DNA of 63,810 nucleotides, counting the filler, from Octopus bimaculoides (lineage: Eukaryota), in the NCBI RefSeq assembly GCF_001194135.2. It is 5 parts of 4 records of this genome, joined end to end, with 100 filler letters (N's around TTAATTAATTAA, not from the genome) between each part and the next. Parts side by side here need not be neighbours in the genome. Positions count along the whole stretch, not along the records: positions 27,910 to 51,170 come from NC_068986.1; 4 more parts are not named here. One strand, given 5' to 3'. Numbering within the stretch: position 1 is the stretch's first letter; every line of letters begins with the position of its first letter. The position numbers and the translations under genes are program-made. This document shows positions 32,888 to 50,462 of this stretch, piece by piece. Under the pieces are notes generated by a model that saw only the letters and a program-made list of their open reading frames with translations, searched no databases and had not been told where the DNA came from.

Positions 32888-33769
32888 CGAAGTCTGATTA
32901 ATAAGTACCTGGACTGTTGCCACAGTAACGAAGCTACAGCAAGCAGAGTGAAGCCGCTTGACAAAGACTGACCTTGAACTCTGATGTGCATGCGCTGAAA
33001 GCTTTAACGTTCTAGTTTGCTTCCGCTGTCTACAACAGTGCTTGGAAGGAAGGTGCGTGACGTGTGATCGTCGCATTGACCATGACACAGAAAGTTGTCA
33101 TGGAGATATTTGCTCAAAGGCTTATGTACAGTTACAGAAAGTGTATGGAGAGGAGTGTATGAGCCGCACACAAGTGTACGAGTGGCTCAGACGTTTCTAA
33201 GTTGGCTGAAAAAATGTCGACATTGACGAATGTTGTGGGAGGCCCGCAACCAAAAGAATTGAGTAAAACATCGCAGATGTGCTTCCAGCTATGAAGGTAA
33301 ATCGTCGAATCACCATCCGCGAGTTATCAGAGGATGTGCATATTAGTTACGGTTCAGTTCAGTCCATTATCACTGAAGATTTGAGTATGAGACGCATGTC
33401 AGCCAAATTTATGCTAAAACTGCTTTCAGCTGACCAAGAAGACACTCGGATTTCAGTTGCACAATATCTCCTTGATTGTGTCGAGAACGATGAAAACTTT
33501 TTCAAAACTTTGCGTAGGCCTCTGAGCAGGTATCACTAAGCTTTTGGCAAAATTTGATGCAGATTATCTGCTCAACCTTCTCTGTCGTAGTGAATGCGAC
33601 ACGCGTTACTTCCAAGCAATATTGTAAACAGCGGAAGTGAGTTATAACGTTAAAACTTACTGCGCATGCATAGCAGAGTTCAAGGTCAATCTGTACCAAG
33701 CGGCTTTACTCTGCGTACTTTAGCTTTGTTTCTATGACAACAGTCCGGATATTTATTAATCAGACCACG
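32888..33769 (+). mobile_element. Mariner derivative with two inverted 5' ends
   Basis: Decayed N-terminal HTH (QLQKVYGEECMSRTQVYEW...GRP...NRRITIRELSEDVHISYGSVQSIITEDL.MRRMSAKF). 33520-33769 is an inverted, diverged copy of the left end including the first transposase codons (EQIICIKFCQKL). Confidence 0.8.
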
Positions 33770-33782
33770 TATATTGATCAGA

Positions 33783-36713: not shown

Positions 36714-37833
36714 CAATGTGTCAGTTTTTTATGTCATTTGTATGAATTTAAGAAAAGACGCGTATCTCATCAAAGAAAAGCTATATTTGAAAACAAACTG
36801 GTACAAATGATCAAGAGAATACTTTTATCGTCCCTGTTTGATGAACCCATCGTTAGTATTAATGGCCACTTCAACACGGGATCGGAAGCGTTGACAAGTA
36901 CAAATCCGATGATCTTTATCAATTTTGGACACAACGCTGGATATGGCGGATTCGAGAAATTGTATGGTGTAATGGGTGTTGATTCCGTTTTCTCCATACG
37001 TAGCAGGCTATTGAATTGAGGTCTGGTGAGCTAGGAGGCCATATGTCAGAGAAAACATGATCATGGAGATTAGCACGCGTTCAAGCTTGGGTTGTCCTAG
37101 CCTTATGAGACGGCGGAGAGTCTTGTTGGAAGGCGTATGGTCTTCCGTTGCGTAATCTGTCTATCCAGGGCCTCAGACAGAGGCATTGACTCTTGAGGCC
37201 TGTGAAGGGAAGAGGCATGACATCTTCCTCGTTGCTGATGAGTCCTAGAAGCATCACAGTTGCTGGGAACTAAGTATGCATGACCGTCGGAATCTCATTC
37301 AGGTCTCTGTATCATAATCTGTCGTTCCATCAATTTACCTTTTGCATCTGGTCAAAGTTTTTCTTACTGGAGAAAACCAAAACATTCCAGCCTCTTGGTG
37401 ATTTAACTTGTTAAGCAAGCGCTTTGCGCGGATCAAACGATTCTCTCTTGTCAAATCCGGTATAAACTGACCCACCCATCCTGTATCATATGATTTGTAC
37501 AGGATTTTCTCATGCACAGCTCTTTTGATGGTGCATTCTGAAACCGTGAGGTTTTTTGTGCGTTTTGCATTTAGCTGCTGATGTTGGACTTCCGTCAGCA
37601 GCTTCCAACTCCTTTCTAAATTTGACAACAAAGGATCAGGCAACTTTCAGGAAGTGAACTATTTCTGTATCACTATGCTACACTTTTAGAGCAACGATTA
37701 CAGCATGCTTTTTCATTTGCTGGTTCAATCTGATGTCTGACACTATTTATCCGAAGATTAAAGCTAAACAAATTGAGTTAGAAGAAAGTTTTAGCTCTTG
37801 AAATAGTTGTCCGCAACAAACTGACGGCCCCTG
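36714..37833 (-). mobile_element. DD37D (maT-type) transposon remnant
   Basis: RLIRAKRLLNKLNH..WF, FPATVMLLGLISNE, RPYAFQQDSPPSHKA, WPPSSPDLN, QRFRSRVEV. Flanked by TA; terminus CAGGGGCCGTCAG at 37833. Confidence 0.8.
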
Positions 37834-42499: not shown

Positions 42500-44372
42500 G
42501 CCCATGATCTTGATAAGTTTTACATAAGATTATTCTATGTATATACTTTTAGCTTTAATGACTGCTTCAATGTAGAACCAAAACGTTGGTATATCTGCAT
42601 TAATTGATTCTTAATGATTTCGAACATTATCTGTATAATAGCGGTCTTCATTGAAATATGGTATTATGACGTAATCGATTAGGTCTCTATTTCAACAATG
42701 CTCTAACCGTAGTAGTCCACTGGATTTCAAGGTGGTGAGTATGGATGCCACAAGTTTGGTGTTACACGATCATAAATATTACCTGACATGCATTCTTGGA
42801 TTACATGAGCTTTGTGAGAAGGCGCTGAGTCTTGTTGAAACGCGTGTGCTTTTCACTGCGTACATCATCCATTCAGAACTTAACAATTGTCTCCAGCATC
42901 CCAGCGTATCCAGTAACATTGGTTCTATGACCCTATAGAAAGTTGTGAGGTGTGATGATTTGACCTTCGTTATTAAAACCTCCACACACTATCATATTCG
43001 ATGGAAATTTAGTGTGCACCACTCTGGGGACTTCAGAAGGGAATGCACATAACAATTTATCTCATTCCCTGTTAGACGTTTGGTCTTGGTTTAAGTTTTT
43101 CTTATTAGAGAAGAACCAAAGCATGCTATATGTTCATGAGAGATTTTCATTTTATTAAGCTTTGTATCCTTCCATACGTTGGATATACAAATTTCACGAA
43201 GCGGTGATAGACACAACTGTCTTCACACGACATACTTCAAATTACTCCAATAAATACAAGCTCTCAACGATTTTCTACGACTTCCACGAACTATCAACGA
43301 CTCCTACGACTCCTCTCTCGTCTCAACCAGTACGCTACTTTTTATAAGAGTTCGGCTAGTCAATCCATCCAATCCCACAGGCATGTCAATGACTTTCGCC
43401 ACATCTCTTTTTGAGATCGACTTCCGTTGGAAGTTAATATTATTGATTTTTTTTCTTCCACCACATACTGTCTAATATATCTTCCATATACAGTTGAAAA
43501 TCCTTTCTCTGAAATTCCATAATGGGAAACCTTCAAATTCCAAAAGTCATTTTATAATGCTGCCATAAAACACTGAACCTAATTGAAATATTTGGGACTT
43601 TCATAAGTGGATATCCTCGTCGCCACTTTTGTATCCTTCTATATGTTGGATTATACAGATTTCCCGAAGCGGGGATAGACACAACTGCCTTTACACGATG
43701 CACTTCTAAATTACTCCACTAAACACGATACTCCAATAAATACAAATTCTCAATGATCTCAATGACTTCCTACGACTTCCACGAACTTTCAACAACTCCT
43801 GCGACTTCTCTCTCTTCTCAGCCAATACGCTATTTTTATAAGAGTTCAGCTGGTCCATTCTTTCAATCTCACAGGGGTGAGAATGACTCTCGCCACAACA
43901 TTAAGTAACCACTTGACACCGGTTGAATCATTTCTTATTTTTTATTGCCCACAAGGGGCTACACACAGAGGGGACAAACAAGGACAGACAAAGAGATTAA
44001 GTCGATTACATCGACCCCAGTGCGTAACTGGTAGTTAATTTATCGACCCCGAAAGGATGAAAGGCAAAGTCGACCTCGGTGGAATTTGAACCCAGAACGT
44101 AGCGGCACAGTTCTGATTGTCTACTTCGGTACCTGAAGTTCTTTCGGATTACCCTCATTGATTTTGCGGGATCATTATCGATAATGTTTTGAATCTGTCG
44201 GTATCCCAATGTTTAGACTGTTTCCTTCTCATTGATATGGCTGAAACATTCTTGCTAAAGGCTTCCAGTCGCATCCGAACTTTATGTACAAAAGCTAATG
44301 CAGCATTTAAAAAGTTGGCAATTTCTAAATCCCTGCGTTGCGCACATAAAGCAGCAATGATTGTGCGCATGC
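42500..44372 (-). mobile_element. DD37D (maT-type) Tc1/mariner transposon remnant, interrupted by the TRIM-like element and a SINE
   Basis: N-terminus MRTIIAALCAQRRDLEIANFLN...IDNDPAKSMR (44370-44110). C-terminus VVHTKFPSNMIV...FQQDSAPSHKA...LWHPYSPP*NPVDYY with 37 residues between the 2nd and 3rd Asp. Many stops. Confidence 0.8.
43160..43900 (-). mobile_element. Miniature LTR retroelement (TRIM-like or internally deleted Gypsy)
   Basis: Two diverged direct repeats of ~245-270 bp (43630-43900 and 43163-43403), both TGT...ACA on the minus strand. PBS TGGCGACGAGGAT at 43625-43613; purine tract AAAAAGAGA abutting the 3' LTR; ~225-bp non-coding interior; TTAAG direct repeat at 43155-59 and 43901-05. 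Confidence 0.8.
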
Positions 44373-44509
44373 CCCCCCCCCTCCACACACACACATGTAT
44401 ATGTGTGGGTATATATTTATGCAATTATACATATTGCATGTTTATATAGGTGCGTCTAACCATCTATTTTTCATTCTTTCCTCTACCTACCTTTCCCTGT
44501 CTCTCTTCC

Positions 44510-44545
<36 letters not shown>

Positions 44546-44784
44546 TATATACTTTATTTAAAAGCAGCAGAAATATAACAAAAGACTGTTACTCGAATGC
44601 AATCAAAAGTATATATGTATATATATGTGTGTGTGTGTGTGTGTATCTACATATGTATGTATATATACACATACACATATATAGTTATATATGCATATGT
44701 ATATATACATACATATATATATTACATAGATAGATACACAAATAAATAAATAGAGTTAAACGCAGGTGTTATTCAAATTCTTTT

Positions 44785-48111: not shown

Positions 48112-48397
48112 ATCTGGAAGCTAAAAGATGTAGTAGATTTCATAGATGTTCGAGATGTCTGTCATTTCGGGGCCAGCTTTTAGAATAGCAGTAGCTATGA
48201 AGGTCTTACTGAAAAAAACATGAGTGTAAGTAGGGATTAATATCATCTACATATGAAGCCGCATTCATGCTTTGTGATTAGCGAAAGAATCGAGTGCATA
48301 AAAGTCGTGCAGTTGTAGTTTAAAAAAGGGTTGTTGAAAGGATGAATTTTTGTGGTACGCCATTTAGAAAATTTCAGATTATATAATTCATATAAAC

Positions 48398-48653
48398 GTA
48401 GGAGTGGCTGTGTGGTAAGTAGCTTGCTTACCAACCACATGGTTCCGGGTTCAGTCTCACTGCGTGGCACCTTGGGCAAGTGTCTTCTACTATAGCCTCG
48501 GGCCAACCAAAGCCTTGTGAGTGGATTTGGTAGACGGAAACTGAAAGAAGCCCGTCGTATATATATANNNNNNNNNNNNNNNNNNNNNNNNNNNNNNNNN
48601 NNNNNNNNNNNNNNNNNNNNNNNNNNNNNNNNNNNNNNNNNNNNNNNNNNNNN

Positions 48654-48684
<31 letters not shown>

Positions 48685-48907
48685 TTGTGTGTCTGTGTTT
48701 GTCCCCCCAACATCGCTTGACAACCGATGCTGATGTGTTTACGTCCCCGTAACTTAGCGGTTCGGCAAAAAGAGACCGATAGAATAAGTACTAGGCTTAC
48801 AAAGAATAAGTCCTGGCGTCGATTAGCTCGACTAAAAGGCGGTGCTCCAGCATGGCCACAGTCAAATGACTGAAACAAGTAAAAGAGTAAAAGAGTAAAA
48901 GAGTAAA
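48398..48907 (+). mobile_element. tRNA-derived SINE family A (near full length; gap in the internal microsatellite)
   Basis: A-box tggctgtgtggt, B-box ggttcagtc, caccttgggcaagtgtctt core, internal (TA)(GT)n, 3' ctccagcatggcc, (AAAAGAGT)n tail. Confidence 0.85.
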
Positions 48908-49684: not shown

Positions 49685-50462
49685 AGTTCAAATTCCGCCC
49701 AGGCCGACTTTGCATTTCATCCTCTCGGGATTGATAAATTAAGTACCAGTTGCGTACTGGGGTAGATGTTTCGGGCGTTGAGCTTAGAATAGAAAAGATT
49801 ATTATAAGGCGGCGAGTTGGCAGAATCGTTAGCACGCTGGGCGAAATGCTTAGCGGTATTTCGTCTGTCTTTACGTTCTGAGTTCAAATTCCGCCGAGGT
49901 CGACTTTGCCTTTTATCCTTTCGGGGTCGATAAATTAAGTACCAGTTGCACACTGAAGTCGATGTAATCGACTTAATCCCTTTGTCTGTCCTTGTTTGTC
50001 CCCTCTATGTTTAGCCCCTTGTAGGCAATAAAGAAATAAGAAACGTTAGCACGCTGGGCAAAATGCTTAGCGGTATTTCGTCTGTCTTTACGTTCTGAGT
50101 TCAAATTCCACCGAGGTCGACTTTGCCTTTCATTCTCTCGGGGTTGATAAACTAAGTACCAATTGCGTATTGGAGTAGATGTAATCGACTGGTCCCCACC
50201 CCCAAAATTTCGGACCTTGTGCCTAGAGTAGAAAAGATTATTATAAGGCGGTGGGCTGGGGGAAACGTTAGCACGCCGGGCGAAATGCTTAGCGGTATCT
50301 CATCTGTTTTTTACGTTCTGAGTTCAAATTCTGTAGAGGTCGACTTTACTTTTCATCCTCTCGGTGTCGATAAATTAAGTACCAGTTGCGTATTGGTGCC
50401 GAACTAATCGGCTGGCCCCTCCCCCAAAATTTCGGGCCTTGTGCCTAGAATAGAAAAGAATA
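49685..50462 (+). mobile_element. Head-to-tail cluster of four SINE family B copies
   Basis: Repeated aaggcggcgag.tggcagaa.cgttagcacg...gagttcaaattccgccgaggtcgactttgcc...ggggtcgataaattaagtaccagt units of about 200-240 bp. Confidence 0.85.

What the first reader, a model, noticed from the sequence alone, without database searches (positions are those of the whole stretch)
43160..43900. TRIM-like miniature LTR retroelement nested in a DD37D transposase
Seen: two TGT...ACA direct repeats, a 13-nt PBS (TGGCGACGAGGAT) after the 5' LTR, a purine tract before the 3' LTR, only ~225 bp of non-coding interior, and a TTAAG duplication. Removing the element restores ...WLLNKMK..., matching the RLLNKL motif of the sister DD37D copy at about 37400. 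Established: the PBS is complementary to the 3' end of metazoan tRNA-Ser(GCT) as I recall it, and TRIMs are reported from plants, ants, cestodes and bivalves. Inference: this may be a cephalopod TRIM family; I know of no description of one.
Basis: partly seen in the sequence, partly recalled or inferred. Interest (0 to 1): 0.75.

Follow-up and report, generated by a model that had tools for sequence, protein, structure and literature searches.

The report
Old miniature LTR retroelement in octopus transposon
This is a real but old and dead 740-bp non-coding LTR retroelement (TRIM-like) that landed inside a decayed DD37D transposase gene in an octopus-type genome; it is an ordinary kind of mobile DNA, and I could not test whether it belongs to a multi-copy family.

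Summary
Window 43160-43899 (740 bp, functional strand minus) has these parts:
- two direct repeats of 244 and about 272 bp, 86% identical in aligned columns (blastn E 1e-57);
- a 13-nt primer-binding site that abuts the 5' repeat;
- a 9-nt purine tract that abuts the 3' repeat;
- a non-coding interior of about 220 bp;

The PBS is 13/13 complementary to the tRNA-Ser(GCT) 3' end as printed in the literature. Removing the insert gives a sequence colinear with the sister transposon copy and reads ...GVKWLLNKMK.... The host is a DD37D Tc1/mariner pseudogene.

No ribozyme, tRNA-like or 5S-like sequence lies in the repeats, so the element is neither a retrozyme nor a Cassandra/Helenus/Ajax type.

The repeats have diverged (K2P 0.16), so the insertion is old and inactive.

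No cephalopod genome is searchable with these tools. I found no second copy in the 23-kb piece or in one 22-kb Octopus sinensis locus.

Verdict: a structurally complete TRIM-type element and a new member of a known kind. Family status is open. Interest is low to moderate.

The parts
43154..43159 (.). Left copy of the target-site duplication, ATTAAG (CTTAAT on the element strand). The true duplication is 5 or 6 bp.
   Evidence: It is identical to 43900-43905. The sister transposon copy has one CTTAAC at this site.
43160..43403 (-). 3' LTR (terminal direct repeat), 244 bp. On the minus strand it reads (GA)TGTGGCG...GGATACAAAG.
   Evidence: E 1e-57 against the other repeat, 86% identity in aligned columns.
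43339..43347 (-). TATA-like motif TTATAAAAA (minus strand) in the 3' LTR. It lies inside a 15-nt block that is identical in both LTRs.
   Evidence: Its role as a promoter is inferred, not shown.
43404..43412 (-). Polypurine tract AAAAAGAGA (minus strand), directly 5' of the 3' LTR.
   Evidence: A 9-purine run occurs at 0.007 per position in the piece.
43404..43625 (-). Non-coding interior of about 222 bp, including the PPT and PBS.
   Evidence: The longest stop-free stretch is about 63 codons. The six-frame translation found nothing among 5.8 billion proteins at E<=0.01. It has no similarity elsewhere in the piece.
43613..43625 (-). Primer-binding site TGGCGACGAGGAT (minus strand), complementary to the 3' end of tRNA-Ser(GCT) including CCA.
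   Evidence: One search gives the sequence. The 11-mer is unique in the piece.
43626..43899 (-). 5' LTR, about 272-274 bp. On the minus strand it reads (GT)TGTGGCG...GGATACAAAAG. It carries two short tandem duplications (9 and 18 bp) relative to the 3' LTR. Its TATA-like motif is at 43833-43841.
43900..43905 (.). Right copy of the target-site duplication, ATTAAG.
42580..44361 (-). Host: a decayed DD37D Tc1/mariner (DDE_3) transposase pseudogene. The element interrupts it at the codons for LLNK(M/L)K, about 15-20 codons before the first catalytic D.
   Evidence: Local tblastn with homologue P0003. Homologues carry PF13358. The 37-residue spacing is shown.
43931..44101 (.). A separate SINE-like repeat inserted in the same transposase pseudogene, 31 bp from the element. 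It is not part of the element.
   Evidence: a 92% identical copy at 49872-50043, partial copies at 49686-50413, and a 76% match in Octopus sinensis locus L001.

Best explanation
This is a dead, ancient copy of a non-autonomous miniature LTR retrotransposon with TRIM architecture, lying on the minus strand.

Proposed life cycle:
1. An RNA was transcribed from the 5' LTR. A conserved TATA-like motif lies about 60 nt into the LTR.
2. Host tRNA-Ser(GCT) annealed to the 13-nt PBS next to the 5' LTR and primed minus-strand DNA synthesis.
3. The purine tract next to the 3' LTR primed the plus strand.
4. Reverse transcriptase and integrase came in trans from an autonomous LTR retrotransposon. In cephalopods that is most likely Gypsy or Copia.
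5. Integrase made a 5-6-bp staggered cut at CTTAAT inside a DD37D transposon copy, which produced the duplication.

Afterwards the two LTRs drifted apart (K2P 0.16), so the copy has been immobile for a long time.

Shown here: the anatomy, the PBS-tRNA complementarity, the duplication, the paralogous empty site and the absence of recognisable coding sequence.

Inferred: trans-mobilisation as the short form, the identity of the partner and promoter use.
For: - Direct repeats with E 1e-57.
- The PBS is 13/13 to tRNA-Ser(GCT) 3' ends printed in PMC8632637 and PMC4592253, and 11/11 to human Ser-GCT-1-1 in PMC10359600. It lies exactly at the LTR edge.
- A 9-nt purine tract lies at the other inner edge.
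- A perfect 6-nt flanking duplication, against a chance match of 0.001 per site pair.
- The empty site is colinear with the sister copy and the reading frame is restored.
- No recognisable coding relic.
- No Rfam family at E<=1 in 42500-44600 and no tRNA-like gene, which argues against the Pol III and ribozyme variants.
- At 740 bp with 244/272-bp repeats, the size matches published TRIM definitions (PMC6934838; PMC10886601).
- Gypsy and Copia are ubiquitous in cephalopods, while BEL, DIRS and Ngaro are almost absent (PMC10294476).
Against: - Only one copy is known. None was found in the rest of the 23-kb piece or in a 22-kb Octopus sinensis locus. Those two stretches are far too little sequence to judge copy number.
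- The canonical TG...CA ends are not flush with the duplication. They leave 2-3 nt (GT at the 5' end, AAG at the 3' end), so the exact termini and the duplication length (5 or 6 bp) stay ambiguous.
- No canonical AATAAA lies on the element strand.
- The PBS was matched to human and tick tRNA ends, not to the octopus tRNA.
- The right repeat (about 272 bp) slightly exceeds the classical 100-250-bp range.
Confidence: 0.6

Rival explanations
1. This is a one-off derivative. An autonomous LTR retrotransposon (Gypsy or Copia) inserted here at full length, and a later internal deletion removed gag-pol. Only the leader with the PBS and the 3' end with the PPT remained. On this reading the short form never transposed and there is no TRIM family.
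For: The same LTR, PBS, PPT and duplication evidence fits equally well. Only a single copy is seen. The old age (K2P 0.16) leaves plenty of time for deletions. The LTRs themselves carry indels.
Against: No coding remnant at all is left in the interior. A deletion would have had to keep both priming sites and remove everything else, leaving a size typical of TRIM interiors. LTR-LTR recombination, the common decay route, yields solo LTRs and not this structure. Neither point is decisive.
Confidence: 0.3
2. This is not a retroelement. It is a local A-B-A segmental or tandem duplication (1.5 units of a roughly 480-495-bp repeat) whose PBS-like, PPT-like and duplication-like features are coincidental.
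For: The copy spacing of 467-495 bp is formally a 1.5-unit tandem. TRIMs and satellites can interconvert in bivalves (PMC6934838).
Against: The joint chance is tiny. It would require all of the following together:
- a 13-nt exact complement to a tRNA 3' end placed exactly at one inner repeat edge;
- a 9-purine run placed exactly at the other inner edge;
- a perfect 6-nt duplication around the whole unit;
- a clean paralogous empty site.
Confidence: 0.03
3. This is a specialised TRIM variant. Either it is a retrozyme (hammerhead ribozymes in the repeats, circular RNA intermediate) or it is a Pol III-driven TRIM of the Cassandra, Helenus or Ajax type.
For: The size and architecture resemble those groups (PMC10886601; PMC7761336 is listed).
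Against: The Rfam scan of 42500-44600 on both strands found no hammerhead, tRNA, 5S or any other family at E<=1. ARAGORN found nothing.
Confidence: 0.02

Closest known systems
Plant TRIMs (terminal-repeat retrotransposons in miniature, first described in potato and Arabidopsis)
   Same: Under 1 kb in total. Terminal direct repeats of a few hundred bp. A PBS complementary to a tRNA 3' end right after the 5' repeat. A PPT before the 3' repeat. No coding capacity. A 5-bp-class target-site duplication.
   Different: A different kingdom with no sequence relation. Here the primer is tRNA-Ser(GCT). From my own knowledge, plant TRIMs usually use tRNA-Met. One repeat (about 272 bp) is slightly longer than the classical 100-250 bp. 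Only one copy is known here.
biv-TRIM of bivalve molluscs (PMC6934838)
   Same: The same phylum, the same miniature LTR-interior-LTR layout and a PPT.
   Different: biv-TRIM has no identifiable canonical PBS and often forms tandem arrays. This element has a textbook PBS and stands alone.
[quoted passage not shown]
   Same: Non-autonomous LTR elements under about 1 kb with PBS and PPT. Helenus also occurs in a mollusc (Helenus-2C_CGi).
   Different: Their repeats contain a tRNA-like or 5S-derived sequence. None is detectable here. Animal Helenus makes 4-bp duplications, whereas this one makes 5-6 bp.
Internally deleted autonomous LTR retrotransposons and LARD-type derivatives
   Same: LTRs, PBS and PPT are retained, coding sequence is lost, and mobility depends on a partner.
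   Different: LARDs are several kb long. A one-off deletion would be unique in the genome. The two cannot be told apart here.

Membership tests
TRIM (non-autonomous miniature LTR retrotransposon) | Two terminal direct repeats of roughly 100-250 bp | tested here: met
   244 bp and about 272 bp, E 1e-57, 86% identity in aligned columns. The right repeat is slightly over 250 bp because of two small tandem duplications.
TRIM (non-autonomous miniature LTR retrotransposon) | Total length under 1000 bp | tested here: met
   740-741 bp between the duplicated target sites.
TRIM (non-autonomous miniature LTR retrotransposon) | PBS complementary to a tRNA 3' end immediately after the 5' repeat | tested here: met
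   TGGCGACGAGGAT is 13/13 to the tRNA-Ser-GCT 3' ends printed in PMC8632637 and PMC4592253, and 11/11 to human Ser-GCT-1-1. The octopus tRNA itself was not available.
TRIM (non-autonomous miniature LTR retrotransposon) | Polypurine tract immediately before the 3' repeat | tested here: met
   AAAAAGAGA at 43404-43412 on the minus strand. Background is 0.007 per position.
TRIM (non-autonomous miniature LTR retrotransposon) | No coding capacity for gag or pol | tested here: met
   Stop-free stretches are at most about 64 codons. The six-frame query found no protein at E<=0.01.
TRIM (non-autonomous miniature LTR retrotransposon) | Target-site duplication and an empty site | tested here: met
   A perfect ATTAAG on both sides. 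The joined flanks are colinear with the sister transposon copy and the frame is restored.
TRIM (non-autonomous miniature LTR retrotransposon) | TG...CA termini flush with the duplication | tested here: inconclusive
   TGT...ACA is present but lies 2-3 nt inside the duplication. With a 5-bp TTAAG duplication the element starts TG but ends ...CAAAG.
TRIM (non-autonomous miniature LTR retrotransposon) | Multiple dispersed copies with the same short interior and different duplications (mobilised as the short form) | not testable with these tools
   No cephalopod genome is searchable. There were 0 further copies in the 23-kb piece and in one 22-kb O. sinensis locus. Exact-pattern scans of the metagenome, prokaryote-genome and viral collections gave 0 matches.
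TRIMp3 (Cassandra, Helenus, Ajax) | tRNA-like or 5S rRNA-derived sequence inside the LTRs | tested here: not met
   No Rfam match at E<=1. ARAGORN found nothing.
Retrozymes | Hammerhead ribozyme in each repeat | tested here: not met
   No hammerhead family matched at E<=1 in 42500-44600.
DD37D Tc1/mariner transposon (the host of the insertion) | DDE_3 transposase with 37 residues between the second and third catalytic Asp | tested here: met
   Homologues carry PF13358. P0003 has D250 and D288. The host copy reads FQQD, then 37 positions, then D in NPVD with one in-frame stop. The transposase is a pseudogene with many stops and frameshifts.

The most novel reading that the evidence does not exclude
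This copy is one member of a dispersed, so far undescribed TRIM family in octopods. It would be the first cephalopod TRIM. Unlike the bivalve TRIM, it has a canonical PBS, primed by tRNA-Ser(GCT). That PBS would point directly to its autonomous Gypsy or Copia partner.
Probability: 0.45. Interest if true: 0.35.

Novelty: new member of a known kind. Interest (0 to 1): 0.25.

Why it matters
If a family exists, it extends TRIMs to cephalopods and gives a mollusc TRIM with a clear tRNA primer. The published bivalve TRIM lacks one. A clear primer makes the search for the autonomous partner straightforward. It also provides a small marker for dating insertions among octopus species.

It does not change how LTR retroelements are understood. 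For annotation, it explains a 740-bp interruption of a DD37D transposase pseudogene. It also shows nested layering of repeats in this region: transposon first, then the TRIM and a SINE.

Tried and rejected
1. I concatenated the six-frame translation of the whole element and searched 5.8 billion proteins, hoping to catch spurious ORF calls on other copies. There were no hits. The database evidently lacks octopus non-genic DNA. Even the DD37D family, with two copies in this piece, has no hit above 55% identity. The null result therefore says nothing about copy number.

2. Exact-protein look-ups of two window ORFs were not on record.

3. I ran exact-pattern scans with an LTR 21-mer, an LTR 23-mer and the LTR-end plus PBS. 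They covered the metagenome, prokaryote-genome and viral collections. All returned 0 matches, as expected for collections without cephalopod DNA.

4. A mariner HTH fragment at about 33000-33540 gave one Octopus sinensis protein and hence one 22-kb O. sinensis locus. That locus shares several repeats with the piece at 72-91% identity, which supports an octopod origin. It has no match to the element.

5. A search for the neighbouring SINE sequence in papers found nothing.

6. Plus-strand orientation was rejected. There is no TGG-initiated tRNA complement after the left repeat and no purine tract before the right repeat.

7. Retrozyme and Pol III-TRIM readings were rejected.

8. I did not read function into the conserved blocks of the LTRs. 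Runs of 14-18 identical bases are unremarkable at 14% divergence.

Full report
**Observation.** The sequence at 43160-43899 contains two direct repeats, 43160-43403 (244 bp) and about 43626/28-43899 (272-274 bp). They align with 86% identity in aligned columns. Counting two indels, identity is 77% and blastn E is 1e-57. The two indels (9 and 18 bp) are short tandem duplications inside the right repeat.

**Orientation.** The functional orientation is the minus strand.
- Directly after the right repeat, whose inner edge is C43626, comes TGGCGACGAGGAT. This is the reverse complement of 43613-43625.
- Directly before the left repeat comes the purine run AAAAAGAGA. This is the reverse complement of 43404-43412.
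- The opposite orientation offers neither a TGG-initiated tRNA complement nor a purine tract.

**Interior.** The interior is about 222 bp. It has no stop-free stretch longer than about 63 codons.

**Flanks.** The unit is flanked by a perfect ATTAAG at 43154-43159 and 43900-43905.

**Is it more than chance?** Within this piece:
- two random sites share a 6-mer with probability 0.001;
- a 9-purine run occurs at 0.007 per position;
- the 11-nt core of the PBS occurs only once.

I checked it against sequences printed in papers.
- Human tRNA-Ser-GCT-1-1 ends ...CCCACCCTCGTCGCCA (PMC10359600). That matches 11/11, and 12/13 over the full PBS.
- The 3' fragment of tRNA-Ser-GCT-3 is AUCCCAUCCUCGUCGCCA (PMC8632637). 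That matches 13/13.
- A tick small RNA reads CGAATCCCATCCTCGTCGCCA (PMC4592253). That also matches 13/13.
- The other serine isoacceptors printed end differently.

The priming site is therefore specifically a tRNA-Ser(GCT) site. The octopus tRNA itself was not available. ARAGORN found no tRNA genes in the piece or in the one octopus locus fetched.

**Insertion site.** The host is a Tc1/mariner-superfamily transposase pseudogene on the minus strand.
- A local tblastn with the intact homologue P0003 maps residues 15-70 to 44361-44194. It maps residues 152-233 to 43124-42879 and residues 243-333 to 42852-42580.
- Homologues carry Pfam PF13358, DDE_3.
- P0003 has 37 residues between the D of FQQD (250) and the D of NPLD (288).
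- The host copy shows the same 37 positions, FQQD...NPVD, with an in-frame stop.
- Joining the flanks with one ATTAAG retained gives ...NDSTGVKWLLNKMKISHEH... on the minus strand.
- The joined DNA aligns without a gap at the junction to the sister copy near 37350: AAGTGGTTACTTAATAAAATG against AAGCGCTTGCTTAACAAGTTA. The sister has a single CTTAAC there. This is a paralogous empty site.
- The insertion lies in the codons matching RLLNKLK (P0003 residues 139-145), shortly before the first catalytic D (residue 158).

**What it is.** The anatomy is that of an LTR retroelement without any coding capacity.
- A concatenated six-frame translation of the whole element found no protein at E<=0.01 among 5.8 billion sequences.
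- Rfam found no family at E<=1 in 42500-44600 on either strand.
- The element is therefore not a retrozyme, which would need hammerheads. It is also not a Cassandra, Helenus or Ajax type, which carry tRNA-like or 5S-derived sequence in the repeats (PMC10886601).
- Size and layout fit the published TRIM definition. That definition is under 1 kb, repeats of 100-250 bp, PBS after the 5' repeat and PPT before the 3' repeat (PMC6934838). The right repeat slightly exceeds 250 bp.

**How it most likely worked.**
1. Transcription started in the 5' LTR. A TATA-like TTATAAAAA sits about 60 nt into each LTR, within a 15-nt block identical in both. Its use as a promoter is inferred.
2. tRNA-Ser(GCT) primed minus-strand synthesis at the PBS.
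3. The PPT primed the plus strand.
4. Reverse transcriptase and integrase were supplied in trans.
5. Integration produced a 5-6-bp staggered cut at CTTAAT.

A survey of mollusc transposons reports Gypsy and Copia as ubiquitous in cephalopods, with BEL/Pao, DIRS and Ngaro almost absent (PMC10294476). The partner is therefore most likely a Gypsy or Copia element. This too is inference.

**Age.** The LTRs differ at 35 of 242 aligned sites (24 transitions, 11 transversions; K2P 0.164). At assumed neutral rates of 1-5e-9 per site per year, this corresponds to roughly 16-80 million years. The rates are assumptions, not measurements for octopus. The copy is long dead.

**An unresolved detail.**
- If the repeats are read with the usual TGT...ACA ends, 2 nt (GT) and 3 nt (AAG) remain between them and the duplication.
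- Both LTR copies share the trailing ...ACAAA(A)G, and the PBS follows it with no spacer. The LTR therefore probably extends to the duplication.
- With a 5-bp TTAAG duplication the element (43160-43900) begins TG but ends ...CAAAG.
- With a 6-bp duplication it begins GT.
- One copy cannot settle this.

**Organism.**
- A mariner HTH fragment at about 33000-33540 has its most identical hit (69%) in 'protein GVQW3 [Octopus sinensis]'.
- The 22-kb O. sinensis locus around that gene is L001, from CM016879.1. It shares several repeats with the piece at 72-91% identity, including the SINE that sits 31 bp from the element.
- An octopod origin is thus supported. The species is not determined.

**Family status, the deciding question.** This could not be answered.
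- No second copy of the LTR or the interior exists in the 23-kb piece or in L001.
- Exact-pattern scans of the metagenome, prokaryote-genome and viral collections returned nothing.
- These collections do not hold cephalopod genomes, so the nulls are uninformative.
- On priors I put about 0.55-0.6 on a mobilised short family. I put about 0.3 on a one-off internal deletion of an autonomous element.

**Novelty.**
- TRIMs are documented in plants, hymenopterans, taeniid cestodes, bivalves and others.
- In the open-access library, no paper describes one in a cephalopod.
- The only paper that contains both 'retrotransposons in miniature' and 'cephalopod' merely cites the bivalve work.
- Repbase and Dfam could not be consulted.
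- At best this is a new member of a known kind, with a canonical PBS that the bivalve TRIM lacks.
- My interest score is 0.25.

Noticed in passing
window 36837-37743 (minus): A second, nearly full-length DD37D transposase pseudogene. It aligns to P0003 residues 1-349 with stops and frameshifts, and the third catalytic D is replaced (SPDLNSIA). It served as the paralogous empty site.
   Followed up: partly
window 32892-33771: A mariner-type HTH (PF17906-like) N-terminal fragment at about 32985-33540 on the plus strand. An inverted partial copy lies at about 33506-33771. Both arms match the same O. sinensis stretch (L001 9694-10237), which is annotated there as 'protein GVQW3'. This looks like a head-to-head or palindromic remnant of a transposon 5' end.
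   Followed up: partly
window 43931-44101; 49686-50413: A SINE-like repeat of about 170 bp. One copy lies in the same transposase pseudogene, 31 bp from the element. A cluster of four or five full or partial copies lies at 49686-50413, 82-92% identical. A 76% match exists in O. sinensis L001. Rfam and ARAGORN do not call a tRNA-like part.
   Followed up: partly
window 48390-48887: A repeat split by an assembly gap (N run 48568-48653). It matches at least three separate places in the 22-kb O. sinensis locus at 82-91% identity, so it is a high-copy octopod repeat family of unknown type.
   Followed up: no
window 27910-51170: The piece is a gap-rich draft. It has seven N runs of 86-933 bp, nearly all bordered by microsatellites such as (CA)n and (TA)n. 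No convincing host gene was seen among the stop-free stretches of the six-frame translation.
   Followed up: no
window 43748-43808 and 43708-43743: The 27 extra bases of the right LTR are two local tandem duplications: TCTCAATGA x2, and an approximately 18-bp ACTCCA(A/C)TAAA(T/C)AC unit. The LTR also has a loose 10-bp periodic GACTTCCTAC-like motif.
   Followed up: partly
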